Under the pieces are notes generated by a model. That model was given only the letters and a program-made list of their open reading frames with translations. It was not told where the DNA came from and made no database searches. A stretch of DNA of 64,000 nt from NCBI GenBank assembly GCA_950097015.1, contig CATNEN010000001.1:8556001-8620000 (forward strand). The letters run 5' to 3'. Every line of letters starts with the position of its first letter. Positions within the stretch are counted from its first letter, which is position 1. This stretch comes from Macrostomum hystrix. Lineage: Eukaryota; Animalia; Platyhelminthes. Below are positions 44,732-63,270 of this stretch, in pieces. A program made the position numbers and the translations under genes.

Positions 44732-45255
44732 TTAAACCACGTTGCCGCCACTTTTGCGCATCAGACGGGGCGGATGCGGCGGCGGCTGATCAGTGGCCGA
44801 GGACGACGATGAAGGTCCAGCAACTAGGCCCATGGCTTCTTCGTAGCGCGGCGGAAGGTCCTGATTATTGGTGGTGCCATTAGCCAGAAGCTCGTCAAGG
44901 CTGGGCTGGGAGGCTGGCACCGGAGGAGCCGGGCGCCTGGGACCGTGGCCGTGTCCGATGGGAACAACCGACGCGCCCGGACCATCAGCTAGACGTTCAG
45001 CGTGGAGCAGCATAGCCTCCTGCTGGCGGCGGTGGTGCTGTCGGGTTGGTCGCTGAGGCGACGCAGAGCCGTCCTCGCTGCTGCCGGAGCCGGTGCTGCC
45101 ACCGGGTGACAATTTCTTGCCCCGGCGACGATTGACGCGAATGGCAAAGATGGCGACAGCGATTAGGAGGGCCGAGGCGAGGGCGCCGACAAAGACGAAC
45201 ACGATTGGCTCCAGCCAGCGGCGCATTGAAGCCTCATAGGCCGAGGCGGCGATCT
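44732..45255 (-). CDS. MAM receptor constant last exon: TM helix and cytoplasmic tail
   Basis: Acceptor CCGCAG|AG, phase 1; IVFVFVGALASALLIAVAIFAI then RVNRRRGKK; LPPRY. Confidence 0.9.
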
Positions 45256-48200
45256 CTGCGGATTTTGAAAAAAAACGGAGTTGAAGCTTAGTGTACCAGA
45301 GGTCTTGAGTTCGAATCCTAGTCAAGGGAAAATTTAACCATCCGAGCAATACACACGTCTGCCCTGAATTTCTCACTGTGCCCAGGGGGCCAGGCCCCTA
45401 AAGTCTTCTATCGACGACTGTGTGCAAATGTAGCCTCGCAAATGTACATTCGAGCTTAGGAACCTTTGTACGAGAAACCGGACCGATAAGAAACTATATA
45501 TATTATTCTTTTTTTTACTCACGATGGCAAGGTCGATGATAAGCCGTGATATTGTCCACACAGATCCTGGCATTGGGATTGTTAGCCGGAATCGTACCCT
45601 CGAAGATCAGCTAGAGAAAAATTCGAATGAGAGGCACTTTCGTTAAAGCGAAACTTTTAAACAGTAGACGTTTTAAACTTCTGCTGTTTGGTGTAACAGA
45701 CGAAACCCTAAATTAATGTTTACCTTGAAATCTGAATAATCAATCAAATCAACAACAGCCTGTTGCCATTCGGCACTAAAGCCTAAATAGTTTTCATTTC
45801 TAGCCGAGTATTGATTTCGTTGCTGATTGTTGCTAGTCCATAAAGCCTTGTTTTGGCTGCATTGCGTTACGGGTGGTGATAAGTTATCTTTGTTACACAT
45901 GGTAATGCCGGTTGAGTAGAATGTCTCTTGTTATATTTTACACTTTTAAAGGCCTAACAATACTTAGCCTACAGTAGTGTGTTAATGATAGGCTTAAAAG
46001 TAAATCAATCTAACTATACTAAATTAGATTCAAATACTTAGAATAATGATCATAAACGCCAATCCTTTCAATGCGTTAAGGTCTAACAAAAACTTTTTGG
46101 GCAATAAAGTGTGTATCAGACTTTGAAGTAACAAAAATCAATCACCAGAAATACAATAAGTTAATCAAATATTGTTAAGATAATTTGTGCCAAGTTATTA
46201 GCCGTTAGCCGTGTTAGTTAATCAGTATGATTCCGTCTCAAGCATTAGCGCTTTGATTATCAAGTAAAAAAGTGCAACTTAAGCAAAACTTTGCCAGTAA
46301 AATTAGAAAAGCAATCGATAATTATTGATTGCTTTATTGGGAATAAATAATTTGTTAAGAAAGCTAGTTTATTGGACTCAACCGGCATTACCAGAAAACG
46401 CCAGAATTTTGTGTCTCGATGTCCACATTACGACGCTGACAGGAGCTAAAACGTGTAATTCAACATTGCTAGTGTCAACGCTTGTGCTTTCATCTGCCTG
46501 CCTAAACAATTGATATAAATATTTTTGGCAGCAAAGAGGATAAGAGAACCTTAAAGTCTGAGTCAGACTGAAGGTCAACAGTAATTGAAGACCAAGTTGT
46601 TAGTTCATCGAATGATTTGCGATTTGACTGCCACAAAGGACTATTTTGACAGAATATTCCACTACCACCGAGCTGCTTAGATTCAACATTGCGACATGAA
46701 CTGAAAATTGTCATTTATAGTACAGAGACAATAATAAACTGCCATCATTTAGCTTATTTATTGAGTTCTGGTGAATTTGGCAGCGAGAGTCAACAGCTAA
46801 ACACTAAAATAGCAGCGCTTAAATACCTTGAAATCTACAGCGGTCTCTATAGAAACATGAGCCTGGTTCCACAACGACTCCTTTTTTGAAGCAACAGACG
46901 CGGTCGACCAAATTTTGACATTATCACAGGTGACAGAAGTTTTCACCTGACCAGATTCACTACGCTCTGTCTGGTGGCACGATCTATCAGACATTTTTAT
47001 GTATAAAACATTTTTGTACAATTTCGTCTCCTTTAACTAAAACACCTAGTTCAACTGAGCTCATTGGCAGCAAGGATAAAACCATCGCTAAAAATGATAA
47101 TAAAAATAATAACAATTGCAGGAAGGCTGTGGGCAAAGGTACATCATTTGGTGACACTAGACCCGCAACCAGCCAGGACGCAATTCTGCTCATTTCGCTA
47201 ACTCATACATACACGCACACAGATACTGTACGCAGACACATACTCACACAGGTGTGTACATCTGCCCTGACTTTCTCATCGTTAGGCAGTGTATACTCCG
47301 CTCTGCCTTGGAGATTGGCCATCAAGGGCATAAATTGCACGACGAGTCCCCAAGCCTTCTCTCCGCGGCTGCGCCCCAAATAAATTTGGCCTCGCCGCGG
47401 AATCGAGGCGTAATCGAGCTTAGGGACATTGGTGCGAGAGGCAAACGCGTTAAAAGCTCTGCTACCGACCCTCATCGCTAAAAACGAACTTCTACCTTGA
47501 AATCAGCTGCTGAATCAACAGAAACCTGAACATTAGTCCATTGGTTTCTATCAGCTTCTGAGTAAGCCGTTTCAGCAGCAAGACTAGTCCAAATTTTGTC
47601 GCTGTGACAGAGCATAGCTGTTCGAGTCCTGCCACTGTTGTTAACATCAGATTGACTACACGAACTAGAAATCGTGAAATTCATCCGAGCTTGTAAAACT
47701 ACTATCATTAGCCTGGCAGAAATTAAAATACGAATTGCTTCAAAGAACCATCTTGACACCGGAGTTTGACTTGGATTTGAAAATTATAAATTTACCTTGA
47801 AATCGCTACCAGATTTAATCGGAATTGAAACTACACTCCATCTGAGTCTATCAGGATTAGACACGGTTAAACTATGACCAGATGCTGAGCTATTGGTTGA
47901 CCAAATCAGTTTGTTTTTGCACAAAACCGAAGTGAAAATTTCATTTCGTTCAATTTCATTGGCCTGTTGGCAAGATCTAAAATACGTTTGTAGCAAAACT
48001 TTTTGCTAAGAGGGCGAAACTAATTCTAAGAAAAAATCGGAGAATACTTCAAGGTGAGTTTTTCGGAGCTGAAGTGGTTCAATTTAAGATTTTTTGAAGA
48101 ATGTTTGTTATTACCTTAAAATCTCCATTTGATGTTAAATCGACATTGACAATGGACCAAATATTAGCATTGCTAACGGATGGCGCAGTATCCGCACTTG

Positions 48201-51200
48201 TCCACAATCTTTTGTTATCGCACAGAACAGATGTAAATACACCGTCTGGTTTAACGCGATTCGATTGCAGACACGAACTGAGTAAGTTGAGCAAAGTCAA
48301 TTTTTATTGAATGAGTCCTACGGATTACCGAGAATTAGTTAATTAAAGCAGCGAGGAATCCTTATGTCTCAAACCCGTCTAACCCTTTCTAGTAAATAAT
48401 TAAGTCTTTGTCATTCAACATTAAACTAACCTTAAAATCTTGCGAATGCTGAAGATTAATTTGCACTACACGCCAAGCTAAACTAGACAAGCTTGGGTGA
48501 TTTGTAGATTTCCAAACTACCTGGTTGCCGCAGGTGATAAAGTTGTACTCTAAGCCTTTAGTTTCTCGCTGGTTTTGGGTACAGGAACTAAAAATCCAAT
48601 TGAATCATAACTTGTAGAGAAAAAAATTATTTGAACCATTTTGGCAGCTTGGGGAAGACAAACCTAGTAGATGGAGTATTTTTAATTACCTTGAAATCTG
48701 ATTGAAGCTTAAATGTGATAGACACAGATACTAGCTGCCATTTAGAATTTACTAATATGCTGGCAGTGTCAGGTGAGCCTGTTGCTACCCAGACGCGTTC
48801 ATTCTTGCAAGTGTGAGCACTAATAAAACGACCGTTTTCCTGATCCTCAGAGGTTGAGCAAGACCTGATATTTTGAGCAATACAAAAAAGTTTTTTCCCT
48901 GGTTAATTTAAAATCAATTTTATGAATCGATATTTGGAGGAAGACTTCACTGACTTAGTGCCTTAGAAACTAATATTTTACCTTAAAATCGTTTTTCGAA
49001 GTTAGATCAACACTAACAGAAGACCAGTCATTTTTGGTTCCAATACGAACACCAGACTGTCCCATAGTCCATAGTTTTTTGTTGTCGCAAGTCACCGAGG
49101 TGAATAAACCATCTGATTTAACTTGATCAGATTGCAGACATGAGCTACGAAAATTATTTGAAACATTTTTGTTAAATTTTAAATTAAATGTTTTTGTAAG
49201 GCTTTTTGACAGCGGAGAATCGAATCAATGCTCCTTAAAATTTATGGAGACAGTATAAAAAATCACCTTGAAGTCTGGCGAATGCTGCAGACTAACTTGA
49301 ACACTGTGCCACCTTGCTGAGCCACCAGTTAAACTGTCCCGCTGATTATTATTCCAAACTACCTGATTACCGCAGGTAACAAAGTTGTAATTAAGGCCCT
49401 CATTTTGACGATGATCCTGCGTGCATGAGCTGCAATTGTACAATACGACCTAAATTCAGGTCTAAAGAACTGATGCACACGTTCCATTCCCTTGATATAT
49501 ATATATAATTGGCAGCAAGTGAAGCTTTGCATAAAGGTGCGTTCTTCATACCTTATAATCAGATCGATGTTTAAGATCTATAGAAACGGAACCCAACTGC
49601 CACTGTTGAACAGCTTGTCTTTGGCCAACCCAGATTCTTTCATTCTTGCACAGGTGGGCACTAATAAAGCGACCGTTTTCCTGATCCTCAGAAGTTGAAC
49701 ATGATCTAGTTTGTTAAAGAACAACGGTAGGCTTTGACATGACACACATTTCATTTTCAGAGGTCTCAAGGGAAGACTTCAAACGCATATTTAGGCTTCA
49801 ACCTAATGCGTGATAATAAAGTATACTGGAAAACACCCAAACCTTAAAATCAGTCCCAGATTCGAAGGTGACTTGCTGTACTATCCAAGATCCACTTTTA
49901 ATGGAATTAACAGCTGAAACTGAAGCAGATACTGCGTCATCTGAACGCCAGGCCACCTCATTGTGACAGGTGAAAGATTTGATTTCTTTACCCGATCGCT
50001 GACGCATCTTAGTGTTTTCTTGACTACAAGATCTGATAATTATAATTTATGGGTTAATTGTGCTTAAAACTAGGCAAACTTTTCTAAAAATTGACACGAA
50101 GAGCTTCAAGGTTTTCCTATTCGTTTCAAAATTTGTAGTTTCTAAAGACCGACCTTAAAATCTGAGTTGGATTCCAAATCCAGATACTGCTGCAACCAAG
50201 AATCAGGCCGAATTGCACTATTGTCAGTGTCAGGCAATTGAGTGCGCCAGACAATTTCATTGTGACACAGCAGAGACTTGAACTGTTTGCCAGTTTGATG
50301 ACTTAAACTGTTGTTCTCTTGACTGCACGATCTAACATTTTTAAGACATAGTCTTTATAGAATATCGAATTCAAACAGGCCATACAACGGGACAAACTTC
50401 AAGGCCCCTTGTGTATTGAGTAGCTTACTAGAACAGAGTTTAATAATAAAATCCCTCCTTTGAAATTACCTTAAAATCTGAGCCAGTAGGCAAGCTAACA
50501 AAAGCGGAGTACCAAGAACCGACATTGACTCCTGTAGCTAGCATGGAATATTCCGATGTCCACACAACCCGATTATCACACAAAACTGATTTGAAATCGG
50601 CACCCAGTTCATTGCGAACTTTCTGGGTGCAGGAGCTAGGTCAGAAGAAAAAAATAATTTTAGGCAATCATACTCGTATGTTTGCAAAAGAAATCTACGA
50701 AAGAACAATTAGGCTGGGAAGACTTCAGACAATCGATCTTTATTAACCTACGAGATTTACCTTAAAATCACGACCGGTAGCAATATCAACAGATACTGGA
50801 GTCCACTTTGGCTCCGCAGCTCCAACTGGGGACAAAGTTGCCTTCCATAATTTTAGATTCTCACTAGAATGTGTTGAAGTATTTGTAACCGAAAATGTTT
50901 GAATAACTGCTTTTAGTAGTATCATTATTATGAAGGTTGTAAATGATACGCTACATACCAATAGTGACCCGCAACCTCTTGACCAGCCCTCTGCTTTTCC
51001 ATAGAGACGCATGAACTGTTTGATATTTCAATAACAAAATCTGAAATTAACCTCCTTCATTCTGATAGAAATTAGCCATGATAAAATTTTCGTTCTTTGG
51101 CAGAAGGGAAGACCCACTAAGAAAAGTCGAAAGGAATAAATGAAACAAACTCTCTAAAAAAGTCTATGTTACCTTAAAATCTGAATTGTACTTCAAATCG

Positions 51201-54200
51201 ACTGAAACGATATTCCAAGAGCCATCAGCTTTGGCAGAGGATATCCAAACATCTTCATTGCGACACATGTGCACACTGAACGCTTTCTCTTTTGGCTTTG
51301 CCACTGTGCAGGATCTGGTTTTTACATTGTTATGTTAAAGAGCTTTTCTATGAAAAAAAGAAATGAGGATCTGTTGGTAGCGTAAATTTTCGAGCGTAAA
51401 TTTGACAGCAGGAACACTTGCCTTCGAAATTTAACTGCAAAAACTAAGTTAAGAAAACGAAATGCTACCTTGAAATCTGCAGCCTGTCGCAAATCAACAG
51501 AAACTGATTGCCAAATTTGAACGGTACCATCTAAATTCGAGCTAGACCACAGAACGTCACTTTCGCATAGGGATTTTCGTTTCTCGGCACCGGACGATTT
51601 AATGTTACTCGCCACAGTGCAAGACCTGTCGGAACATGTTTAAATCATAGTGCGCAAACTCCTGTTTTAATTTAATAATCCACGAGTTCAAGGTTTGGCC
51701 AGCGGAGAAGAATCGAGCAAGGGTGGTGACAAACCTTAAAATCTGTCTCAGATTCGATGCTAACAGACTGAGTAAGCCAACTGTTACTAAGGCCGGCATT
51801 GTCCTGCAAACTAGTCGAGCTCCATAATTCCCAGTTGTCACAATTTGAAGTGCGCAACTTCTTGTCGCCGTGCGTGATTGCTTTCAATTGCGAGCAAGAT
51901 CTGGGCGAATCGTTTCAAAATATTTCCCATTAAAAGATATTAAACTTCGGCGTAAGATTTTAACAGCGGGAACGCTTACCATTTTTGCACCAATTTCGTG
52001 ACGTACGTACTTAACTATTAAAACAAAACAATTACCTTAAAATCGGTTTCATCACTACCAATAGATATATGGATTGAATTCCAATTTAATGATTGACTAT
52101 AAGTTGAACGCCAAATTTCGACACTCTTGCATAAATGGGACATGACTTTCTGGCCATTGTTGGATAGTTCGGAGTCAGACACGCACGACCTAGAAAATAA
52201 TCCAGAAACTGTTTGTTGACCTGATATAATGAACGATGCAACTGATAATCTATCACAGAAGGAAGACTTCAATATAGGGCTATTCTATAGTGTGTTCTAA
52301 GGTTCTAATTGGCAGTTCTTACAACAGAGAACATGTAATTTATGCAGATATGTGACTGTGTGGTCCTATTTGTCTTAAGCGTCTATTTAAATTCTTAGTC
52401 CACTAGACTCACTTTAAAATCTGCCGCCGATGCCACACTAGCATAAACAGTTTTCCAATCGCTTGTACTACTGCTACTACTTAAAGTAGACGACAGGTCG
52501 GCATCTGAAGAACCGCCGCCAGATTTCCACAATGTGACACTTTTACACAGATGAGAGTTCACCTCTTGACCGTTCTCCAGCTTAGAACCCGACATGCATG
52601 ATCTTTGTTGTGTGGAAATAGAAGAGTTAAATAAACATTTTAATTGAAAAATCATTCCTCTTGTTATTATAAAATTAAGCAGTTGGGAAGAAAGGGCTCG
52701 GAAAGTGCTTGATACGCCATCTAGAATAAATAACTAAATGGATAGAAATAAACCCTTTGTTAATTAGATAATTATTTGGCATACTTGAATGGCAGATAAT
52801 GACTTTTTATCTTATATGCACCAGTTATTTCCACCAATACTCATTTTTATAAAATTCTGTTTTTATTGTTTTGCGCTCCGGTGCAAGGTACCTTGAAGTC
52901 TTCCCCGCTGCCAAATTTGAAAAATCAATGCTTTACTGTAAGTTATATATGTATAATACATCAAATTGCGATAAGCCAATGCACAAAGCAATACATCAAG
53001 TAAGAATACGTAAATAAACAATGAGCATCAGGAAAAATGTTTATTATTAACCATAAAGCTTTGAATCCTAAATACGAGTATTTCTTTCTACGAGCGTAAG
53101 AATTGAGCACATTCAAAAAGCACCTACCCACGCGATCGTTTCAGTAAGGTAAGACTAGACCCTCCGGTAATGTACATTGAGAAATCTAAGCACATTGAGG
53201 CAGCGGACATGCCGCTATCAACTTCTAAGTCGCGTGGGACAGCGGCAACCCAGCCTGGAAACCAAAGCTTCCCAGACAGGGCGGCCTGATTAGCCGGAAT
53301 ATGACTGCCAACTACAGGGAGCAGGCAGGCAGCGTCAGTTCGCATAGCAACCATCTTATTAGTTGCCATGGGAACCTCTATAGAGGTCCAACGCCAAGCA
53401 ACAAGATCGTTAGCTGGATCGTTGGCATAGTTGCACATCCGCTGGCTGGCAAAATCACAGTTGATATCAGTACAACTGACTGCATTTAAGAATATTTAAA
53501 GCGTTTTGTTAATGGAATATTAGATTGATCACGTAACCATATTGCAACGGCAAGGCTCGTTCTCCACATTGAGATTTTAATGTCGAAAATTGTAAAATAG
53601 ACTGAATAAGCCTACCCAAAAGAACGCTTCAACAAGGCCAAATGTACTCCAGGAGTTGCAGCCTCTCTAGATAGTAGTCTATAAGAGAACTGAAGGCACA
53701 TCTGTTCTGAAACATCCCGCCGACTCTCAGCTGTTCGTCTGACAATCCAGTTACTGAGAAAGATGCCAGTGTGTTGGCCGTTAGAACTGCCCAATACGGA
53801 GGCATCGTTTGGAATCATGCAATAGGCAGATGCGCCAGTTTTTGGATCGATAACGGACTTCCAATTGGCCGCCCTATTATAAGGATCGTCACTCCAGGCG
53901 CAAGACATTGGTGAATTCGATTTACACTCGATGGAGGATGCCGAATTGGTAGCTACAACTGAACAATCCATTGCATTTGAATACCATTTAAAATGAACTT
54001 TAAAAACTAAACTATTAAGATGGCTCGTTGCTCCATTTACTTCAGCGAAGAAAAACAATAATTGAAACTAACACCTAGACAATTTTGGGCCAGCTCTGCA
54101 GCTAGTGGAGCAGTCGCAGCTTTTGTACGACGTTTCTAAAGACTGCACAGCTGTTTAGTCCGTAACAAACAAGCTAATGCAAAAAGCATACCCAAATGAA

Positions 54201-57200
54201 CGCTTCAGCAAAGCCAATTGTAGGCCGGACAATCCTAGACTTGTGGGTGCAACAAATTTAAAAGCAAACTCGAGACACATGCTTTGCTGTTGCTGTTGTT
54301 GTTGTGATTGCCTAGCAGCAATCCAACCGCTAATGAAACTTCCTGAGTGGTCTCTAGCAGATGAAAACGCTGCCAAATTCGGAATCAAACAGTAGGAAGA
54401 AGAACGACTAGCTTGATCGATGGTTGCCTTCCAGTTGGCCGCTCGATTAAACGGATAATCACTCCAGGCGCACAGAACTGGGGAACTCGACGCGCAGCCA
54501 ATCATATTGGCAAAAAAGCCGACTAGATTTAAGTAAAAATATCAAAAGCAATTTAACGAAAAAACGCAAACAGGCAAAAATCGATCTAAGACTCGTTGCT
54601 CATAAACATGGGTATTTTTCAGGGTTTAATAATCGCTAACCTTACCCATGGGAACGCTTCAGCAATGCTAATTGCATTCCAGAAATTAAGGAGTCTTCCA
54701 TATTAGCGAATCTATAGACAAACTGGACACACATCTGCTGCGATTCTAGAGAATCTGAATCGTCTGCTTTAGTTATCCAATTGCTAAGAAAGCTACCAGT
54801 GCGAACTGGGGAATCGCCGGCAATTGATCTTGTCGGAATCAGACAATAGGACGATGAGGCCCTAAAGGCGTTAGGATCGATTGCCACCTTCCAATTGGCT
54901 GCTCGATTGAAAGGCGAATCACTCCAAGTGCAAAGTGTGGGCGAACTCGATGAACAATCGATTGACGCGGCTAAGCAACAAGCTTGAATAATTTGCAATA
55001 AACATTTTAAGACTTTTTAAACTATCATTTATCTTTAATCAATAAAATATTTTAAATTTAAGGCTCGTTGCTAACATAAAATTTTAGAAAACATACCCAA
55101 AAGTACGCTTCAACAAAGCCAGTTGCAACCCAGACGAAGCTTCTATTAGTGCATCTGGTGCAACAAACTTATAGATAAACTGTAGACACATCAGCTGCCG
55201 TTGTTCACTTTCCTCCGTTGATGTAATCCAACCGCTAAGAAAGCTACCAGAGTGAGCCTTGCCAGAAGAGCTAAGTGACGACGAAATTGAATGAGACAAT
55301 GCCCTGTTAGGAATAAGGCAGTAAGAAGACGAACGACTGTTAGGATCAATCGAGGCCTTCCAATTAGCGGCACGATTGAATTGACCGTCGCTCCAGGTGC
55401 AAAGAATTGGCGAGCTCGATGAGCAATCAATAGAGACACACTGACCAATCGCTATTTACGAATTAAAAAAATAAAAGTGCGTTGCTGAACCCTTACCATA
55501 ACAAAAACAATTACACAGAATTTTGGCAAGGCTCATTGACAAAGGTGAATCGAAGCGACAGATCGCGCAAATGTTAGCAACTAACTAGTAGCCTACCCAG
55601 AAACTCGCTTTAGTAGACTGAGCCTCGCAGCACTAGGGCTGCCAATGTCTGAAGAATCCTGAAGCCGATAAGAAAACTGGAGACACATTTGATCAACTGG
55701 TCGGCTATTATCAGAATCTGATGCGTCTTTAGCCATCCAAACGCTATGAAACTCTGCAACTAAGCCAGCTGCACTGCTACCGCTTGAAACTCGACGCTTA
55801 ATAGGCACGAGACAATAAGACGATGGGACAGATGGACTCGAGCTAGTCGGATCTAAAGTCATCTTCCAAGCGCCATCTTTTTTGTCAAGATCGTTTCGCC
55901 AGGTGCAACTAGTTGAGGCACTCGAATAACAGGCAAGACTATCATCGGATAAAAGTGTTGCTGAAGACAGTTCGTAGATGAAAACATGCTTTAAACAAAA
56001 AATAAATTAAAAAATTAGACTCGGCTCATTGCTCCAAACGCTATACAATTTTGTGATAGTTTTTTTACCCCCAATTTCGCTTCAGTAGACTGAGCGATCC
56101 TTCACGCGATGCGGCTAGATAGCTGAACGCAAGACACATACTAGCCGGTGAGTGCTCGGTGCCACCCGATGAGCCAGCTGTAATCCAATGACTTTCAAAG
56201 CGGCCAATTAAAAAGGATTGCTGCTGAGGTACACTTGGAATCAGACAGAGATGAGATCTGCTGGTTCCGATTGAATTTCTGTCGCCCGCGGCGTCAAGAG
56301 CGGACACCCAATGAGCGCCTTTATTGTCAAAGTCATCGCGCCAACTGCAATGCCCAGCAGAGCTGCATGCTAACTGATCTAGTGTTGCTTGGGTTGCAAA
56401 ACTTCCTGTTTTATGGTGCAGAATATAATCAATTCTTACTTAATTAAACTAGTTATTTTAAGTGAACACGAAAGAAACACGTTTTGGCAAAAGCTCGTTG
56501 CTCCTAAAATCCGGAAAACATTTCTTCGTACCCACGACTCCTTTTTAGCAAGCTCAATCCAACAGTGCCAACTTGATGGCCATCTAAACTCATGGATTGG
56601 TCGATGCGATAGGCAAAGCTAAGGCACATATCGCCAGAATTGGAGGACGATGGCACGTGTCTGCCAGTGAGCCACTGGCTAACAAATCGGGCAACAGCTG
56701 CAGGCCGATTGTTGCCAGACCCCGATCCGGGGCCAAGTTCCGGTACGAGACAACGCGGAGACTGAAAAGCAGCTGACGAATGCAACGAAGCTCGCCAATG
56801 AGCGTCGATGTTGTCCTGATCATCGCGCCATCTACACGGAGTGGCTGAGGCGCTGATACAGCTTAGCTCAGGTACAGGGATAGAAGCCAAACAATTTTCT
56901 AAAAAAATCATAAACAAACTGCCTTTTTTTGTGTGTAGCCTACTGGAAATAAGCGTTACAAAGGCTTCACAAGGCTCGTTGCGGTATTTTATAAACAGTC
57001 TACGTTCCATAAAATACGTAGGCGTCCCTGATCCCATACCCGAGACTACGCTTTAGAAGATTAAGTGTGGCTTGACCAGCAGTCCAGTAAGCGAACTGGA
57101 GACACATCTGGTAATTGTTAGGCGTATTGGAAGCGAGCACAGTTGGACTGACAAACTGGCCACTGGCATCAGCTCCAATAGTAGCTGCGAAAGCAGACTG

Positions 57201-60200
57201 AGGAACAAGGCACAATCCAGTGCTGCCACCAATGACCGAACTGACATCGGCCAGTGTCCAATGAAGGCGACTAAAAACATCATTTAGCCAGGCGCAGTGA
57301 CCACGAGCGGTGCACTGTAGATCGACTCTTGTTGCTGTAGAAACACAAAGAGATCAATTAATGCAACAATAAACAAGCGCGACGCTATTGGAAAAGGCTC
57401 GTTGCTTCCAGAGATCTACTAGCATACAGAGCAAACAGCAAACAAAAAGACAAGAAATTAGCAACTAAATTTCTACCCTCGATTTCTTCGGAGCAGCTGC
57501 AGGTCGACACCGGAAGACTGCTGCTCGCTAACTAGATATCGGAAGTGCAAACAACCAACGCTGGTGTCGGCAACAAAACGGCTAACAAAGCGCGCCTTTG
57601 TTGGAAGATTAATCGCCGATGGATCTCTGATTAAACAATAGTGCGTTTGGAAACGAGCATTTTCAGTCACGGTAGCCAGTTGCCAGTGTGAATCAGTGTT
57701 GTAACTATCGTCCAGCCAATAGCAGCGCGATTTACTCTCGCAGTGCAACTGCTTAATAGCCAGAGTATCGGACTCACAGTTCACTAAGCAAGTAGGAGTT
57801 AAAGGACAGATTTTATCAGGAATGTACAGCCAAAAGCTAAATGTAAACAAGCATTGCAAGGATTTGTTGCTCCATTCAATTCTGTACGCTAATTCATATT
57901 AGTAACGGATTTTTACCCAGAGTGACGCTTAAGCAGCTGCAGCGAAGGAGCATCGACATTGACAAGCCCCTCGGTGTCAGATGCCGAATGCGCAAGCTGA
58001 TAGCTAAACTGCAGACAAGCCGACTGAATTTGTTCGGCAAGAAATAGGCTAACAAAGCGAGCTGACACTGACAAAGGGATAACAATGCTCGGACTGTTTC
58101 TAACCATGCAGAATGCAGATCTGTGTAGAGCAGAATTAGGCAACGCTTGAACAGCAGCAAGTTTCCAATGGGCCTTTGTATTATAGCCATTATCATCGCT
58201 CCATAGACAAGTATCGACGCCGTCACTGTGACAATTCAACGCCTTGATGACCCGACTCGAATCGCCATTAATACTAGACAACTTAACTGCTAAAAGAAAG
58301 CCGATGTACTTTTTATCGTATTTCTTTCTTAATTATAATAAACTAAGTTTCTAACAAGGCTCGTTGCAGGAAGTTTCGATTTAAATAAAAAAACTGATTC
58401 TCCTTACCCAGAATTTCGTTTCAACAATTGCAGCTGACTATCCTGTCCTACGAGTTGATAGGCAAACTGCATACAACCCTGACTAATAGATCCGCTAGCA
58501 ATGAAGAGGCTAACGAAACGAGCCGACACTAGCGAACGGGCGCCACCGCCTGTGACAACTGCGCAATAGCTGCTGCGATAAGTGGTGGCAGCAGCGCTAC
58601 CACCAGTGTCCAATCGTGTTTCGGCAATGCTAGCTAGTTTCCAGTGTGCATCTGTATTATAGCCAATATCGTTGAACCAATTGCAAGATTGTGTGAGGCT
58701 ACTAGAGCTGCCGCCGCCACTGCTGCTGCTACATGACAACTGGCTAATGGCCGCTTGACCGTTCAGTGGCGAGGATTCTAGCCTAGCTGCAGATTTTTTC
58801 AATTTAATTTAATAAACCATTCTTCCCACGATTCTACTTTTTAGCGAAGGCTCGTTGCTACACTAAATCACAAGCCATATTACCTTTTTCTACTACATAA
58901 AACAAAGATTGATAAGCCAATTTTCTAACCCAGATGAGCGTCTTAGTAGAGCCAACATTGGACGATCGTCGGTAGAATCGGCGCCAATTTGAATGCCTCG
59001 ATCGACGCGGTAGCCAAATGACAAGCAGAGACCCAGACTGCGACCCGAGTTGCGAACCCAGTCGCTTAGCAACCGGCCAGAGATAGGAACGGAAGTTGCA
59101 GGAATCAAACCAGCTGTGCACCAACTGTTAGTGACAACTGACTTGGACTTTGATAATGAAGAAGCATCGCCATTGTGAATAGCGAAACGACGCCATTCCA
59201 ATTCACGATTGTAGCCATCGTTTGACCAGCGATCCGTTACTAATGACTCTTCAATTGCTGCTGGACCAGAGGCTGTCGCTGTGCACAGAGTTATATCAAG
59301 TTTAAGTACTTTTTTTCAGGAAATTTCGTTTTCATACGGCACTAAAAGAGGGCAGACTGACTCGCTGCTCCATTGTGCTAAGCGGAATATTACTGGAACA
59401 GTTGGGTTCCAACTATTTAAGCTTCGCTTGAGCCTCGGACTCCTGAGAGAGGGAGAGAGAGGTCTGAAGTTCGAGTCTTCGAAGCCAAAAAAGGAAACAA
59501 CTTGCGCCCTTGAGTGAGACACTTAATCAGCCCATCCAGATATAAAATTGGTACCAGTACCGGAATCAATATTCCACGGACTGTACAGCTGAACGTAGTA
59601 GTGTCTTTGAATGTGGCTGCGTATCACATAATCAAACTAAATAAAATTGATTCTTTGCAATGATAGCTGCAGGTGCTTACACAGGCACACGCTCACAGGG
59701 GTGTACATCTGACCCGACTTTCTCATGGTCAGGCAGTGCACACTCATTGCGGCTTGGCGGTTGGCCGCGGATTCGAACTCAGGAAGCTCAATCTAACTCA
59801 CCCGTGAGCACTTTTCAACAAAGCCAATTGCGGCCTGTCATCAGACAAATCAAGCTCATCCAATGGAACAAAGACTCGATAAACAAACGACAAACAGCGA
59901 GCATTGGCCTGACGATCGACTCCAGCCGTCCACCAGGGACTCTGCAGTCTAGCTGCCCCGCTGCCCTGCAGGCAGACAGCCTGAGTGGCGGCCTCAGTCA
60001 GGTGTCTGACCTGCCAGGAACTGCCAGGGCGCCAGGCCAAATCTACCCAGTTGCAGGCAATGGACGAGCTGTGAGACATCTGCTCAGAACTGGGCCGGTT
60101 CTCAAAATCACAGACGGCTGCGTGATTTAGTACCGAAGTTACCGCTAAACATGAAAAATACACCAAATTTCATTTACAATAAAAAAACTTTACAGACAGA

Positions 60201-60589
60201 AAAGTTAAATAACGCAATATTTTGGCTGCGAATTTTATTACTACATTACTAATCAGACACAAGAATAGACAATACGAAGGTAAATTAATTAGTTAATTAG
60301 TTAATTATTAGCATATTTATAGTGATTCTAGTTTAGTGCTAAATAGCACAATTTTGAGCCATAATCAGCTATTTATTGAACACTCTGCCCCATTCTAAAA
60401 TTACAATCAACAGTTTAAAACTTGGACGAATGGAGCAACGAGCCTTGCCAAAAAACTGCTAGTAAATTAAAAAATTTCAATAACTAACAACTGCGTAAAT
60501 AAAACTGAAAATTTCTTACCTGGGGCTCCGACTAGAAGAAGTAGAAAAAGCACCAAGGAGGCCGGGACCTTAAGCGACGAAGAAAACAT
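44732..60589 (-). CDS. Type I membrane protein with one MAM-like domain encoded by two mutually exclusive exon arrays (14 A x 20 B)
   Basis: Exon 1 (signal peptide) + one A + one B + 45610-45523 + 45255-44732 gives one open frame of roughly 400 aa with the MAM pattern CDFE..C.W...CLSF.Y...W...W....V......FKLIFEG...ICVDNI...PC, then a TM helix. Confidence 0.9.
45523..45610 (-). CDS. MAM receptor constant exon (domain C-terminus)
   Basis: TCTCTAG|CTG...CATC|GTGAGT; LIFEGTIPANNPNARICVDNITAYHRPCH; phase 0 in, phase 1 out. Confidence 0.9.
45724..46445 (-). CDS. Variable cassette B20, split in two (46445-46392 + 45856-45724)
   Basis: SCQRRNVDIETQNSGVF-C-QNKALW...DYSDFK; internal intron TG|GTAATG...TGCAG|C. 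Confidence 0.75.
46550..46700 (-). CDS. Variable exon B19
   Basis: AG|N SCRNVESK...GIFCQNSPLW...SDFK|GT. Confidence 0.85.
46827..46983 (-). CDS. Variable exon B18
   Basis: AG|N SCHQTERS...VTCDNVKIW...VDFK|GT. Confidence 0.85.
47496..47664 (-). CDS. Variable exon B17
   Basis: AG|N SCSQSDVN...LCHSDKIW...ADFK|GT. Confidence 0.85.
47796..47976 (-). CDS. Variable exon B16
   Basis: AG|N SCQQANEI...LCKNKLIW...SDFK|GT. Confidence 0.85.
48115..48277 (-). CDS. Variable exon B15
   Basis: AG|N SCLQSNRV...LCDNKRLW...GDFK|GT. Confidence 0.85.
48431..48587 (-). CDS. Variable exon B14
   Basis: AG|N SCTQNQRE...TCGNQVVW...QDFK|GT (below the ORF-track threshold). Confidence 0.85.
48690..48864 (-). CDS. Variable exon B13
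   Basis: AG|N SCSTSEDQ...TCKNERVW...SDFK|GT. Confidence 0.85.
48982..49144 (-). CDS. Variable exon B12
   Basis: AG|N SCLQSDQV...TCDNKKLW...NDFK|GT. Confidence 0.85.
49267..49429 (-). CDS. Variable exon B11
   Basis: AG|N SCTQDHRQ...TCGNQVVW...PDFK|GT. Confidence 0.85.
49552..49705 (-). CDS. Variable exon B10
   Basis: AG|N SCSTSEDQ...LCKNERIW...SDYK|GT. Confidence 0.85.
49843..50032 (-). CDS. Variable exon B9
   Basis: AG|N SCSQENTK...TCHNEVAW...TDFK|GT. Confidence 0.85.
50154..50331 (-). CDS. Variable exon B8
   Basis: AG|N SCSQENNS...LCHNEIVW...SDFK|GT. Confidence 0.85.
50470..50635 (-). CDS. Variable exon B7
   Basis: AG|N SCTQKVRN...LCDNRVVW...SDFK|GT. Confidence 0.85.
50761..51015 (-). 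CDS. Variable cassette B6, split in two (51015-50959 + 50863-50761)
   Basis: SCVSMEKQRAGQEVAGHY-C-ENLKLW...RDFK; internal 95-nt intron TG|GTATGT...TTCTAG|T. Confidence 0.8.
51173..51314 (-). CDS. Variable exon B5
   Basis: AG|N SCTVAKPK...MCRNEDVW...SDFK|GT. Confidence 0.85.
51469..51625 (-). CDS. Variable exon B4
   Basis: AG|N SCTVASNI...LCESDVLW...ADFK|GT. Confidence 0.85.
51735..51900 (-). CDS. Variable exon B3
   Basis: AG|N SCSQLKAI...NCDNWELW...TDFK|GT. Confidence 0.85.
52036..52189 (-). CDS. Variable exon B2
   Basis: AG|N SCVSDSEL...LCKSVEIW...TDFK|GT. Confidence 0.85.
52413..52602 (-). CDS. Variable exon B1
   Basis: AG|N SCMSGSKL...LCKSVTLW...ADFK|GT. Confidence 0.85.
52891..52916 (-). 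promoter_or_regulatory. Docking site for cluster B (RNA AUUUGGCAGCGGGGAAGACUUCAAGG)
   Basis: Single copy, reverse-complementary to the motif found upstream of the B exons. Confidence 0.85.
53128..53479 (-). CDS. Variable exon A14
   Basis: SCTDINCDFASQRMCNY...MCLDFSM...LLKRSR GG|GT. Confidence 0.85.
53616..53958 (-). CDS. Variable exon A13
   Basis: IECKSNSPMSCAWSDD...MCLQFSY...LLKRSF GG|GT; alternative in-frame acceptor at 53952. Confidence 0.85.
54192..54522 (-). CDS. Variable exon A12
   Basis: IGCASSSPVLCAWSD...MCLEFAF...LLKRSF GG|GT. Confidence 0.85.
54646..54970 (-). CDS. Variable exon A11
   Basis: IDCSSSSPTLCTWSD...MCVQFVY...LLKRSH GG|GT. Confidence 0.85.
55097..55451 (-). CDS. Variable exon A10
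   Basis: IDCSSSSPILCTWSD...MCLQFIY...LLKRTF GG|GT. Confidence 0.85.
55597..55960 (-). CDS. Variable exon A9
   Basis: LACYSSASTSCTWRND...MCLQFSY...LLKRVS GG|GT. Confidence 0.85.
56069..56405 (-). CDS. Variable exon A8
   Basis: LACSSAGHCSWRDD...MCLAFSY...LLKRNW GG|GT. Confidence 0.85.
56532..56898 (-). CDS. Variable exon A7
   Basis: LSCISASATPCRWRDD...MCLSFAY...LLKRSR GG|GT. Confidence 0.85.
57040..57334 (-). CDS. Variable exon A6
   Basis: LQCTARGHCAWLND...MCLQFAY...LLKRSL GG|GT. Confidence 0.85.
57477..57783 (-). CDS. Variable exon A5
   Basis: LHCESKSRCYWLDD...GCLHFRY...LLRRNR GG|GT. Confidence 0.85.
57917..58289 (-). CDS. Variable exon A4
   Basis: LNCHSDGVDTCLWSDD...ACLQFSY...LLKRHS GG|GT; TAGCAG tandem acceptor (58289 or 58286). 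Confidence 0.85.
58408..58786 (-). CDS. Variable exon A3
   Basis: LSC...SCNWFND...GCMQFAY...LLKRNS GG|GT. Confidence 0.85.
58930..59278 (-). CDS. Variable exon A2
   Basis: DRWSNDGYNRELEW...LCLSFGY...LLRRSS GG|GT. Confidence 0.8.
59802..60144 (-). CDS. Variable exon A1
   Basis: VCDFE...ACNW...ARLQSPW...RCLSFVY...LLKSAH GG|GT; most canonical MAM start. Confidence 0.85.
60428..60454 (-). promoter_or_regulatory. Docking site for cluster A (RNA UUUUUGGCAAGGCUCGUUGCUCCAUUC)
   Basis: Single copy about 65-90 nt into intron 1, reverse-complementary to 13 selector motifs. Confidence 0.9.
60520..60589 (-). CDS. MAM receptor exon 1: signal peptide
   Basis: MFSSSLKVPASLVLFLLLLVGAP G|GTAAG, phase 1. 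Confidence 0.85.
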
Positions 60590-60729
60590 GATTAATTAAT
60601 TGATTTTTATATCAGACGATATAGTTTGAGTTTCTGCTCTTGTCTTGCTGTCGCTTTTGTGATGACGGCTGTTGCAGTTAGAGATTGCAGAGAAAAGCTG
60701 CGCTGCAAATAAATCAGGGGAATATTATG

Positions 60730-63270
60730 ATGGGATCTCAGTTATTTGGGATCTCAGTAGGATAGAATATCAGTAGGATGGGATCTCAGTAGGATGGGAT
60801 ATCAGTAGGATGGGATCTCAAAAGGATGGGATCTCAAAAGGATGGGCTCTCAGTATGATGGGATCTCAGTTGGATGGGATCTTAGTAGGATGGGATCTCA
60901 GTTGGAAGGGATCTTAGTAGGATGGAATCTCAGTTGGATGGGATCTTAGTAGGATGGGATCTCAGTATGATGGGATCTCAGTTGGATGGGATCTTAGTAG
61001 GATGGGATCTCAGTATGATGGGATCTCAGTTGGATGGGATCTTAGTAGGATGGGATCTCAGTTCGATGGGATCTCAGTAGGATGGGATCTTAGTTGGATG
61101 GGATCTTAGTAGGATGGGATCTCAGTATGATGGGATCTCAGTTGGATGGGATCTTAGTAGGATGGGATCTCAGTTCGATGGGATCTCAGTAGGATGGGAT
61201 CTTAGTTGGATGGGATCTTAGTAGGATGGGATCTCAGTTCGATGGGATCTCAGTAGGATGGAATCTCAGTTGGATGGGATCTTAGTAGGATGGGATCTCA
61301 GTAGGATGGAATCTCAGTTGGATGGGATCTTAGTAGGATGGAATCTCAGTTGGATGGGATCTCAGTTGGATGGGATCTCAGTTGGATGGGATCTTAGTAG
61401 GATGGAATCTCAGTTGGATGGGATCTTAGTAGGATGGGATCTCAGTATGATGGGATCTCAGTTGGATGGGATCTTAGTAGGATGGGATCTCAGTATGATG
61501 GGATCTCAGTTGGATGGGATCTTAGTAGGATGGGATCTCAGTTCGATGGGATCTCAGTAGGATGGGATCTTAGTTGGATGGGATCTTAGTAGGATGGGAT
61601 CTCAGTTCGATGGGATCTCAGTAGGATGGAATCTCAGTTGGATGGGATCTTAGTAGGATGGGATCTCAGTAGGATGGAATCTCAGTTGGATGGGATCTTA
61701 GTAGGATGGAATCTCAGTTGGATGGGATCTCAGTTGGATGGGATCTCAGTTGGATGGGATCTTAGTAGGATGGGATCTCAGTTGGATGGGATCTCAGTAG
61801 GATGGAATCTCAGTTGGATGGGATCTTAGTAGGATGGGATCTCAGTAGGATAGGATCTCAGTTGGATGGAATCTTAGTAGGATGGGATCTCAGTAGGATA
61901 GGATCTCAGTTGGATGGAATCTTAGTAGGATGGGATCTCAGTAGGATGGAATCTCAGTTGGATGGGATCTTAGTAGGATGGGATCTCAGTAGGATAGGAT
62001 CTCAGTTGGATGGAATCTTAGTAGGATGGAATCTCAGTTGGATGGGATCTTAGTAGGATGGAATCTCAGTTGGATAAAATCTTAGTAGGATGGGATCTCA
62101 GTAGGATGGAATCTCAGTTGGATGGGATCTTAGTAGGATGGGATCTCAGTAGGATAGGATCTCAGTTGGATGGAATCTTAGTAGGATGGGATCTCAGTAG
62201 GATGGAATCTCAGTTGGATGGGATCTTAGTAGGATGGGATCTCAGTAGGATAGGATCTCAGTTGGATGGAATCTTAGTAGGATGGGATCTCAGTAGGATG
62301 GGATCTCAGTAGGATGGGATCTCAGTAGGATGGGATCTCAGTAGGATGGGATCTCAAAAGGATAGGCTCTCAGTATGATGGGATCTCAGTTAGATGGGAG
62401 GTCATTTGGATGGGATCTCAGTTCTTTGGGATCTCAGTTGGATGGGATCTTAGTAGGATGGGATCTCAAAAGGATGGCCTCTCAGTATGATGGGATCTCA
62501 GTTTTTTGGGATCTCAGTTACTTGGGATCTCAGTTCTTTGGGATCTCAGTTACTTGGGATCTCAGTTCTTTGGGATCTCAGTTACTTGGGATCTCAGTTC
62601 TTTGGGATCTCAGTTACTTGGGATCTCAGTTTTTTGGGATCTCAGTTTTTTGGGATCTCAGTTCTTTGGGATCTCAGTTACTTGGGATCTCAGTTCTTTG
62701 GGATGTCAGTTCTTTGGGATCTCAGTTCTTTGGGATCTCAGTTCTTTGGGATCTCAGTTACTTGGGATCTCAGTTCTTTGGGATGTCAGTTCTTTGGGAT
62801 CTCAGTTTTTTGGGATGTCAGTTTTTTGGGATCTCAGTTTTTTGGGATCTCAGTTCTTTGGGATCTCAGTTCTTTGGGATCTCAGTTACTTGGGATCTCA
62901 GTTTTTTGGGATCTCAGTTCTTTGGGATCTCAGTTCTTTGGGATCTCAGTTACTTGGGATCTCAGTTTTTTGGGATCTCAGTTCTTTGGGATGTCAGTTC
63001 TTTGGGATCTCATTTACTTGGGATCTCAGTTCTTTGGGATGTCAGTTCTTTGGGATCTCAGTTCTTTGGGATCTCAGTTCTTTGGGATCTCAGTTCTTTG
63101 GGATCTCAGTTACTTGGGATCTCAGTTTTTTGGGATCTCAGTTCTTTGGGATGTCAGTTCTTTGGGATCTCATTTACTTGGGATCTCAGTTCTTTGGGAT
63201 GTCAGTTCTTTGGGATCTCAGTTCTTTGGGATCTCAGTTACTTGGGATCTCATTTACTTGGGATCTCAGC
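60730..63270. repeat. 2.5-kb 16-bp satellite with two sub-variants
   Basis: TAGGATGGGATCTCAG-type units switch to TTCTTTGGGATCTCAG-type units near 62400-62500. Confidence 0.95.

What the first reader, a model, noticed from the sequence alone, without database searches (positions are those of the whole stretch)
53549..60454. Cluster A docking site and 13 complementary selector sequences
The intron-1 element at 60428-60454 (+ strand gaatggagcaacgagccttgccaaaa) is the reverse complement of a motif that occurs once, about 50-90 nt upstream of each acceptor of A2-A14. Plus-strand starts are about 59361, 58838, 58355, 57854, 57388, 56970, 56482, 56023, 55521, 55060, 54588, 54022 and 53549 (core aaggctcgttgctcc). 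Several deviations (ctcAttg, ctcgCtg, aagActcg) become G-U wobbles specifically on the minus-strand RNA, which supports selection for RNA pairing rather than simple repetition. Only one selector can pair at a time, as in the docking/selector model of Drosophila Dscam1 exon 6.
Basis: partly seen in the sequence, partly recalled or inferred. Interest (0 to 1): 0.93.

Follow-up and report, generated by a model that had tools for sequence, protein, structure and literature searches.

The report
Flatworm exon-choice docking and selector RNAs
A flatworm (Macrostomum) gene for a cell-surface protein has 14 interchangeable exons, and a short intron sequence that can base-pair with a matching sequence in front of each one; this is the exon-picking design known from insect Dscam1, here in a different phylum and a different gene.

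Summary
On the minus-strand pre-mRNA, a 27-31 nt element in intron 1 (window 60428-60458) is complementary to one motif in each of the 13 introns that precede exons A2-A14. Each motif lies 51-82 nt upstream of its acceptor. I found a probable fourteenth partner, for A1, at 60386-60395.

- **Uniqueness:** the motif is the only sequence the introns share. The docking site is the only place in 8 kb of pre-mRNA with this many complements. The core 12-mer is not a genome-wide repeat.
- **Competition:** all 13 duplexes use the same 7-nt docking core, so they exclude one another.
- **RNA evidence:** public RNA-derived contigs join exon 1 directly to 11 of the 14 A exons. They show no A-to-A joint. 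A donors join straight to many cluster-B exons.
- **Strand test:** substitutions favour G-U wobbles on the sense RNA, but only modestly (p about 0.01-0.05).

The exons encode the N-terminal half of a MAM domain. Homologous arrays appear in M. lignano and, judging from concatenated gene models, in flukes and tapeworms.

That pairing causes exon choice is inferred, not shown. DNA from relatives could not be fetched, so covariation is untested. I found no flatworm report in the literature searched. This scan has noted docking/selector designs in two or three earlier notes on other DNA of this genome.

The parts
60520..60589 (-). Constitutive exon 1, coding part: ATG at 60589, signal peptide MFSSSLKVPASLVLFLLLLVGAPG, donor CCAG|GTAAGA after 60520
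   Evidence: ORF; donor; the donor is used in all 10 RNA joints
60428..60458 (-). Docking site in intron 1 (RNA 5'-CAGUUUUUUGGCAAGGCUCGUUGCUCCAUUC-3'), 61-77 nt downstream of the exon-1 5' splice site. The core 60436-60442 (CUCGUUG) is used by all 13 duplexes.
60386..60395 (-). Probable A1 selector (GAAUGGGGCAGAG region). It forms a local hairpin with the dock and lies 241 nt upstream of the A1 acceptor.
   Evidence: z -4.0; MFE and centroid folds; -20.4 kcal/mol, 13 WC + 2 GU
59802..60144 (-). Exon A1 (343 nt)
   Evidence: Joint 60520 to 60144 in runs X2 and X3; donor
59361..59374 (-). Selector A2, 82 nt upstream of the acceptor
   Evidence: (-29.8 kcal/mol)
58930..59278 (-). Exon A2 (349 nt)
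   Evidence: Joint 60520 to 59278 in X1-X3
58838..58862 (-). Selector A3, 51 nt upstream of the acceptor
   Evidence: (-37.2)
58408..58786 (-). Exon A3 (379 nt)
   Evidence: Joint 60520 to 58786
58348..58367 (-). Selector A4, 58 nt upstream of the predicted acceptor; three G-U pairs
   Evidence: (-32.7)
57917..58289 (-). Exon A4 (373 nt). The acceptor is predicted only; no joint was seen.
   Evidence: RNA contig cover
57856..57877 (-). Selector A5, 72 nt upstream of the acceptor
   Evidence: (-32.2)
57477..57783 (-). Exon A5 (307 nt)
   Evidence: Joint 60520 to 57783
57388..57410 (-). Selector A6, 53 nt upstream of the acceptor
   Evidence: (-33.4)
57040..57334 (-). Exon A6 (295 nt)
   Evidence: Joint 60520 to 57334
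56970..56982 (-). Selector A7, 71 nt upstream of the acceptor
   Evidence: (-32.2)
56532..56898 (-). Exon A7 (367 nt)
   Evidence: Joint 60520 to 56898
56482..56504 (-). Selector A8, 76 nt upstream of the acceptor; the strongest duplex
   Evidence: z -8.8; -43.1
56069..56405 (-). Exon A8 (337 nt)
   Evidence: Joint 60519/60520 to 56404/56405
56023..56036 (-). Selector A9, 62 nt upstream of the acceptor
   Evidence: (-36.3)
55597..55960 (-). Exon A9 (364 nt)
   Evidence: Joint 60520 to 55960
55516..55538 (-). Selector A10, 64 nt upstream of the acceptor
   Evidence: (-37.0)
55097..55451 (-). Exon A10 (355 nt)
   Evidence: Joint 60520 to 55451
55060..55072 (-). Selector A11, 77 nt upstream of the acceptor; the weakest duplex
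   Evidence: (-24.0)
54646..54982 (-). Exon A11 (337 nt)
   Evidence: Joint 60520 to 54982
54588..54601 (-). Selector A12, 65 nt upstream of the acceptor
   Evidence: (-25.2)
54192..54522 (-). Exon A12 (331 nt)
   Evidence: A 255-nt loose end at 60520 in X4 maps to 54493-54522
54022..54037 (-). Selector A13, 63 nt upstream of the predicted acceptor; 16 perfect base pairs
   Evidence: (-31.7)
53616..53958 (-). Exon A13 (343 nt). The acceptor is predicted; it lies outside the stretch laid with reads.
53549..53566 (-). Selector A14, 69 nt upstream of the predicted acceptor; one bulged dock base
   Evidence: (-38.3)
53128..53479 (-). Exon A14 (352 nt). The acceptor is predicted; it lies outside the stretch laid with reads.

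Best explanation
This is a docking-site/selector system of competing RNA pairings. It most likely directs one-of-fourteen (mutually exclusive) choice of the A exons of a flatworm gene. The gene encodes a signal peptide, a MAM domain, a membrane-spanning segment and a cytoplasmic tail.

Shown: the pre-mRNA has one docking sequence 61-77 nt downstream of the exon-1 donor. It also has one complementary selector 51-82 nt upstream of the acceptor of each of A2-A14, plus a probable local partner for A1. All selectors need the same 7-nt docking core. In RNA, exon 1 is joined to single A exons, and A exons are joined directly to cluster-B exons.

Inferred:
- On a given transcript one selector pairs with the dock. 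This loops out all A exons upstream of the chosen one.
- Pairing shortens the single-stranded path between the exon-1 donor and the chosen acceptor from 1.2-7 kb to 116-159 nt. That is about the size of this gene's ordinary introns (108-145 nt), so the acceptor becomes the one used.
- The remaining A acceptors stay unused, presumably through a general repression that is not identified here. The A donor then joins a B exon chosen by a second dock.
- Every A exon is 1 mod 3 in length. Including two, or none, would therefore shift the frame, which would back up the exclusivity.
For: - **Complementarity:** all 13 sites are confirmed. Duplex energies are -24 to -43 kcal/mol, with z of -2.9 to -8.8 against shuffles.
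- **Unbiased scan:** across 8 kb of pre-mRNA, only 60439-60453 has complementary 11-mers in up to 8 of 13 introns. Nothing else exceeds 3.
- **Intron census:** the selector core is the only 8-mer shared by more than 3 of the 13 introns.
- **Old array:** the exon peptides are only 20-31% identical to A1. A2 and A3 have 1:1 orthologues in M. lignano at 64% and 74% identity, against 27-31% for cross-matches. The array is therefore old, and the motif has been kept while the rest of the introns diverged.
- **Position:** the distance to the downstream acceptor is constant (51-82 nt). The distance to the upstream donor varies from 24 to 427 nt (and exon coordinates).
- **Shared core:** all duplexes use dock 60436-60442.
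- **Strand test:** there are 9 G-U-compatible transitions against 1 A-C transition (p=0.047). Sense duplexes are on average 3.3 kcal/mol more stable than antisense ones (p about 0.014).
- **RNA:** GT..AG joints link 60520 to the acceptors of A1-A3 and A5-A11, and A12 is reached through a loose end. No A-A joint is seen. A-donor loose ends map to at least 10 different B acceptors.
- **Not a repeat or known RNA:** the motif is not a genomic repeat and matches no Rfam family.
Against: - No causal test exists.
- The G-U asymmetry is modest, and some substitutions are shared by neighbouring selectors, so there are fewer independent events than counted.
- Four duplexes (A5, A6, A11, A13) are slightly more stable on the antisense strand.
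- Some selectors are short: A7 and A11 have 13 nt of contiguous identity.
- The RNA evidence is Logan contigs from one study. These cannot give usage levels and drop rare forms, so rare A-A inclusion is not excluded.
- The acceptors of A4, A13 and A14 are predicted only.
- The local dock/A1-selector hairpin could mean the dock is partly sequestered.
Confidence: 0.8

Rival explanations
1. The motif is a binding site on double-stranded DNA for a protein, which would be insensitive to orientation. An example would be a looping or insulator factor, as with the opposed CTCF sites of clustered protocadherin promoters and their enhancer. The element in intron 1 would be the oppositely oriented partner, and exon choice would be made at the DNA or chromatin level rather than by RNA pairing.
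For: One inverted copy facing 13 direct copies is also the geometry of convergent looping sites. The core is highly conserved. No experiment separates DNA from RNA action.
Against: The A exons are not first exons. All observed A exons are spliced to the common exon 1 at one GT donor, so promoter choice is not needed. Substitutions prefer G-U-compatible changes on the transcribed strand, which a double-stranded DNA site would not. Selectors differ in which flank of the dock they extend into, so no fixed site is conserved beyond 7 nt. The selectors keep a fixed distance to acceptors.
Confidence: 0.06
2. The selector motif is a binding site in the RNA for a protein or small RNA that activates or represses the adjacent acceptor. 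The complementary element in intron 1 would be incidental, or a decoy.
For: A conserved intronic motif at a fixed distance from each acceptor is also what a splicing enhancer or silencer would look like.
Against: This does not explain a single 27-nt element that is the perfect complement of the union of all selectors. Nor does it explain why that element sits in the one intron where the Dscam exon-6 model requires a dock. Selectors vary outside a 7-nt core in ways that keep complementarity, including G-U pairs and bulges, rather than a fixed motif. The chance expectation for such a complement is low.
Confidence: 0.08
3. The similarity is a neutral relic of tandem duplication, and the inverted copy arose by chance. 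The exons are kept exclusive by the reading frame and mRNA surveillance alone.
For: The units arose by tandem duplication. All A exons are 1 mod 3 in length, so the frame alone penalises double inclusion.
Against: The exon peptides are down to 20-31% identity, and nothing else in the introns is shared. Individual exons are orthologous between two Macrostomum species, so the array is old, yet 13-25 nt of the motif persists in every intron. A 15-mer complement is far beyond chance. The frame rule cannot by itself produce direct joints from exon 1 to distant exons across up to 7 kb with no A-A joints.
Confidence: 0.03

Closest known systems
Drosophila/pancrustacean Dscam1 exon-6 cluster docking site and selector sequences (reviewed in PMC11802352; PMC3535345; PMC8791459; PMC12962786)
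   Same: A single docking site lies in the intron just downstream of the constitutive upstream exon. One selector lies upstream of each variable exon. All selectors compete for overlapping dock nucleotides. Different selectors extend into different parts of the dock. The exons form a tandem array, used one at a time, that encodes part of an extracellular domain of a surface receptor.
   Different: The phylum is Platyhelminthes, not Arthropoda. The protein is unrelated: half of a MAM domain rather than half of an Ig domain. There are 14 exons rather than 48. The inter-exon introns are very short (108-145 nt). The array abuts a second variable array with no constitutive exon between them. No hrp36-like repressor, locus control region or balancer pairing has been identified here. 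No functional or covariation evidence is available yet.
Smaller docking/selector or competing-pairing systems, as titled in the papers found: Drosophila cases of long-range pairing in mutually exclusive splicing (PMC4691838), srp (keyword of PMC6071210), PGRP-LC (PMC6191721), human ATE1 (PMC7797038). The gene names 14-3-3xi, Mhc and MRP1 are from my own knowledge, not read here.
   Same: Intronic complements compete for one site and decide which of several duplicated exons is spliced.
   Different: From my own knowledge, those clusters hold 2 to a few exons; here there are 13-14 competitors for one dock. None of those found is in a flatworm.
Ivanov and Pervouchine model for the origin of competing structures by duplicating one arm of an intronic stem-loop together with the exon (PMC6071210, abstract)
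   Same: The dock forms a local hairpin with a derived copy of the motif just downstream in intron 1. The other copies each travel with one duplicated exon unit. This is the pattern the model predicts.
   Different: That model is evolutionary, not a mechanism. It has not been tested here beyond the layout.
Other docking/selector designs noted by this scan in the same genome (s1-394528/s1-394527, s1-291350)
   Same: The same genome and the same design. Those are unchecked AI notes and I did not re-test them.
   Different: They concern different genes and other DNA. Those exons are short (77 nt in one case) and the genes are of unknown function. Here the exons encode a recognisable extracellular domain and two arrays combine.

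Membership tests
Docking-site/selector competing-RNA-pairing system (Dscam1 exon-6 type) | Tandem array of homologous alternative exons, of which one is used per mRNA | tested here: met
   There are 14 homologous exons. Joints from exon 1 to single A exons are seen for 11 of 14, with no A-A joint, and A donors join B exons. The data are contigs from one study, so rare exceptions are not excluded.
Docking-site/selector competing-RNA-pairing system (Dscam1 exon-6 type) | One docking site in the intron next to the flanking constitutive exon | tested here: met
   The dock is at 60428-60458, 61-77 nt downstream of the exon-1 donor. It is the only such site in an unbiased scan of 8 kb.
Docking-site/selector competing-RNA-pairing system (Dscam1 exon-6 type) | One selector per variable exon, complementary to the dock, in the intron before that exon | tested here: met
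   There are 13 selectors for A2-A14, 51-82 nt upstream of the acceptors, with z of -2.9 to -8.8. The A1 partner is probable only.
Docking-site/selector competing-RNA-pairing system (Dscam1 exon-6 type) | Selectors overlap on the dock, so only one can pair at a time | tested here: met
   All 13 duplexes include dock positions 60436-60442.
Docking-site/selector competing-RNA-pairing system (Dscam1 exon-6 type) | Evolutionary signature of pairing: conservation and compensatory change across species | not testable with these tools
   DNA of relatives could not be fetched (look-up of encoding contigs closed), and the genome has no paralogous array. Only within-locus proxies are available: the G-U bias (p=0.047) and the sense/antisense energy difference (p about 0.014).
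Docking-site/selector competing-RNA-pairing system (Dscam1 exon-6 type) | Disrupting the pairing changes exon choice, and compensatory mutation restores it | not testable with these tools
   This needs a minigene or genome editing.
Dscam gene family (Ig/FnIII receptors) | Ig and fibronectin-III domain architecture homologous to Dscam | tested here: not met
   The A exons match only the Pfam MAM domain PF00629, positions 4-93 of 158. The gene works like Dscam1 exon 6 but is not a Dscam.
MAM-domain proteins (PF00629) | Significant match to the MAM profile | tested here: inconclusive
   Single exons score 21.5-24.5 bits, below the 26.4-bit cut-off, because each holds only half a domain. A profile of the 14 exons retrieves proteins whose sources name them as MAM-domain proteins. 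Flatworm relatives pass the cut-off at 33-79 bits over profile positions 1-86.

The most novel reading that the evidence does not exclude
Docking/selector exon choice arose independently in flatworms and is the phylum-wide way of diversifying a MAM-domain surface receptor. Here that means 14 A exons times at least 14 B exons, and homologous exon arrays are visible in Macrostomum lignano, lung flukes, schistosomes and tapeworms. This would be a second, non-Ig, Dscam-like recognition code built with the same RNA trick, and it would be present in major human parasites.
Probability: 0.45. Interest if true: 0.9.

Novelty: new member of a known kind. Interest (0 to 1): 0.78.

Why it matters
Large docking/selector systems, with many selectors competing for one dock, appear in the papers I found only for arthropod Dscam1. 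A 13-14-way example in a flatworm, on an unrelated MAM-domain receptor, would have three consequences.

- It would show that competing RNA pairing is a repeatable solution for one-of-many exon choice, not an arthropod peculiarity.
- It would give an independent system for testing how exclusivity is enforced, including the unusual case of two variable arrays with no constant exon between them. From my own knowledge, Macrostomum lignano can be made transgenic.
- It would point to an unrecognised source of surface-protein diversity in flatworms. Gene models of parasitic species (Paragonimus, Schistosoma, Spirometra, Dibothriocephalus) appear to string such alternative exons together, which suggests the genes are mis-annotated there.

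Tried and rejected
- **Genome-wide repeat:** rejected. The core 12-mer has 15 hits in 220 Mb, 6 of them in this locus.
- **Known RNA family:** none.
- **Second docking site for the A introns:** none found elsewhere in the pre-mRNA, including the A14-B1 intron.
- **Paralogous array in the same genome, for dock/selector co-variation:** none. Only the 14 exons of this locus match.
- **Close relatives of exon A1 by the search for homologous proteins:** nothing. That tool has a length window, so this says little.
- **Fetching orthologous DNA from M. lignano, Paragonimus or Schistosoma:** The other DNA collections hold microbial or viral sequence, by their descriptions. The covariation test was therefore left out.
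- **Exon usage against pairing strength:** not attempted, because the contig depths cannot rank exons.
- **Extra motif match:** a 15-mer hit at 53881-53895 (3 mismatches) lies inside exon A13 and belongs to the exon repeat, so it is not a selector.
- **Cluster-B exons against Pfam, one by one:** no match; they are too short.
- **Limits of the read laying:** Only 5,991 letters were laid with reads, so the acceptors of A13 and A14 were not covered.
Full report
**Gene layout.** The gene is on the minus strand. Exon 1 (60520-60589) encodes a signal peptide and ends at the donor CCAG|GTAAGA. Downstream lie 14 homologous exons, A1 to A14, between 60144 and 53128. Each is 295-379 nt long, and each ends in ...LLKRxxG followed by GT. 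Single exons match the N-terminal part of the Pfam MAM domain, positions 4-93 of 158, just below the cut-off. An alignment of the 14 peptides keeps the MAM cysteines and tryptophans, with only 20-31% identity to A1. Every exon length is 1 mod 3. For A1-A3 and A5-A12 the acceptors are confirmed by RNA. For A4, A13 and A14 they are predictions.

**The observation.** On the RNA it reads UUUUUGGCAAGGCUCGUUGCUCCAUUC. All 13 selector motifs are within a few bases of the stated coordinates.

This is far beyond chance:
- The 15-mer core with up to 3 mismatches gives 12 matches in the window against 1.6 expected, and 0 of 100 shuffles reach 12. Ten of the matches are selectors, one is the dock, and one lies inside exon A13.
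- RNAduplex of the dock region against each intron gives z-scores of -2.9 to -8.8 against dinucleotide shuffles.
- With the selector windows restricted, the duplexes are -24 to -43 kcal/mol, with 16-27 Watson-Crick pairs and 0-4 G-U pairs.

**Three unbiased checks.**
- A census of 8-mers across the 13 introns shows that the selector core (GCAACGAG and its neighbours, in 6-8 introns) is the only sequence shared by more than 3 introns.
- I scanned every 11-mer of the pre-mRNA from 60600 to 52560 for complements in the A introns, allowing up to 2 G-U pairs. Only 60439-60453 stands out, with up to 8 of 13 introns. Nothing else exceeds 3. There is thus one dock, and no second one downstream of A14 for these introns.
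- In the whole 220-Mb assembly the 12-mer GCAACGAGCCTT occurs 15 times, 6 of them in this locus. About 26 hits are expected for a random 12-mer, by my own arithmetic. The motif is therefore not a repeat family. Rfam has no match.

**Geometry.**
- Selectors end 51-82 nt upstream of their acceptors. Their distance to the preceding donor varies from 24 to 427 nt, so they go with the downstream exon.
- The paired part of the dock starts 61-77 nt after the exon-1 donor.
- After pairing, the unpaired path from donor to chosen acceptor would be 116-159 nt. The real distances are 1,241-7,040 nt, and the native A-A introns measure 108-145 nt.
- All 13 duplexes include dock positions 60436-60442 (CUCGUUG), so they exclude one another.

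In intron 1 itself, a derived copy of the motif (GAAUGGGGCAGAG, 60386-60395) pairs with the dock in both the minimum-energy and the centroid folds. It is a probable selector for A1. It also fits the stem-loop-arm duplication model for the origin of such systems (PMC6071210).

**RNA pairing or DNA repeat.** In strand-neutral local alignments of each selector to the ideal complement, 9 transitions give G-U on the sense RNA and 1 gives A-C. The opportunity is 0.60, so the binomial p is 0.047. Sense duplexes are on average 3.3 kcal/mol more stable than the same duplexes on the antisense strand (t-test p=0.015, Wilcoxon p=0.014), and 9 of 13 favour the sense strand. Some changes are shared by neighbouring selectors and may be single events.

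**Expression and splicing.** Four public runs from one study hold 57-65% of the sampled words of 53100-60600. That is close to the exonic share of the stretch by my estimate (about 64%). They also contain spliced forms, so they are RNA-derived even though their kind is not on record.

I laid 54610-60600 (5,991 letters, within the operators' limit). The contigs match at 99% or better, and show the following:
- GT..AG joints run from 60520 to the acceptors of A1, A2, A3, A5, A6, A7, A8, A9, A10 and A11.
- A 255-nt loose end at 60520 maps to the A12 acceptor.
- No joint between two A exons was listed.
- Of the 17 listed loose ends at A donors, 16 map to ten different cluster-B acceptors between 46700 and 52602. 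The seventeenth is a low-agreement consensus of three contigs and maps nowhere.

So an A exon is spliced straight to a B exon, with no constant exon between the arrays. Contigs cannot give usage levels, and they drop rare forms.

**Age and distribution.** A profile of the 14 exons finds 61 proteins.
- **M. lignano.** The best hit is an M. lignano model that fuses the neighbouring lyase gene to A2-like, A3-like and A11-13-like exons. A2 and A3 are 64% and 74% identical to their counterparts there, against 27-31% for cross-matches. Individual variable exons are therefore orthologous between two Macrostomum species.
- **Parasitic flatworms.** Gene models from Paragonimus, Schistosoma, Spirometra and Dibothriocephalus contain several consecutive N-terminal MAM halves. 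In the four checked (P0002, P0004, P0008, P0014), the best Pfam match covers only profile positions 1-86, and those I read end in LLRRxxG-like motifs. These look like concatenated alternative exons.
- **This genome.** There is no second array.

**Literature.** Searches for docking site or selector with flatworm, for Macrostomum with mutually exclusive, for MAM domain with mutually exclusive exons or Schistosoma, and for Dscam with planarian found no report of such a system in flatworms. The library does not cover all journals. This scan has noted docking/selector designs in other genes of this genome (s1-394528, s1-394527, s1-291350). I did not re-test those.

**What is shown and what is inferred.**
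- **Shown:** the complementarity, its uniqueness, its fixed position, the shared dock core, and the one-A-exon splice pattern in RNA contigs.
- **Inferred:** that pairing causes the choice, that unpaired acceptors are repressed, and that frame and mRNA surveillance back up the exclusivity.

Noticed in passing
window 52896-52915 (minus strand), in the A14-B1 intron: A second, different docking-like element (RNA UUUGGCAGCGGGGAAGACUUCA) has complementary 10-mers in up to 6 of 13 downstream cluster-B segments. Nothing else in that intron exceeds 3.
   Followed up: partly
window 45724-53127 (minus strand): Cluster B holds at least 14 exons that all end GAYTTYAAG|GT (...DFK). A donors join at least 10 different B acceptors directly, so the two variable arrays abut with no constitutive exon between them.
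   Followed up: partly
window 52892-52907 (minus strand): The 16-nt element CGGGGAAGACUUCAAG is flanked by AG and GT and looks like the 3' end of a B exon. None of the A-donor loose ends in the four runs leads into it; they go straight to B exons. I found no sign that it is used as a micro-exon.
   Followed up: partly
window 60729-63269: A 2.5-kb minisatellite with a 16-nt unit, about 150 copies at 87-89% matches, starts about 140 nt upstream of the start codon of exon 1. Its role is unknown.
   Followed up: no
window 55254-55264 (minus strand), inside exon A10: The 11-mer UGGCAAGGCUC, identical to part of the docking site, lies inside exon A10 and has complements in 3 introns. It may be chance, or a hidden competitor.
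   Followed up: no
P0002, P0004, P0005, P0007, P0008, P0014, P0016, P0017 (public gene models): Models from Paragonimus, Schistosoma, Spirometra and Dibothriocephalus string together several N-terminal MAM halves. P0004 also carries B-type ...DFK pieces. They look like alternative exon arrays read through as one protein, so the array family seems to span free-living and parasitic flatworms.
   Followed up: partly
window 39861-42145 (minus strand); P0001/P0065: A Bud13 splicing-factor gene (Pfam 2.3e-32) lies downstream of the MAM gene. M. lignano models fuse the array with a Beta_elim_lyase gene, and a model that its source names a BUD13 homolog sits in the same 90% cluster. This suggests the neighbourhood is conserved and the models are fused.
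   Followed up: partly
window 44732-45376 (minus strand): This open frame has a hydrophobic stretch (IVFVFVGALASALLIAVAIFAI) followed by RRRGKK and a proline- and serine-rich tail. It is the probable membrane anchor and cytoplasmic part of the same gene.
   Followed up: no
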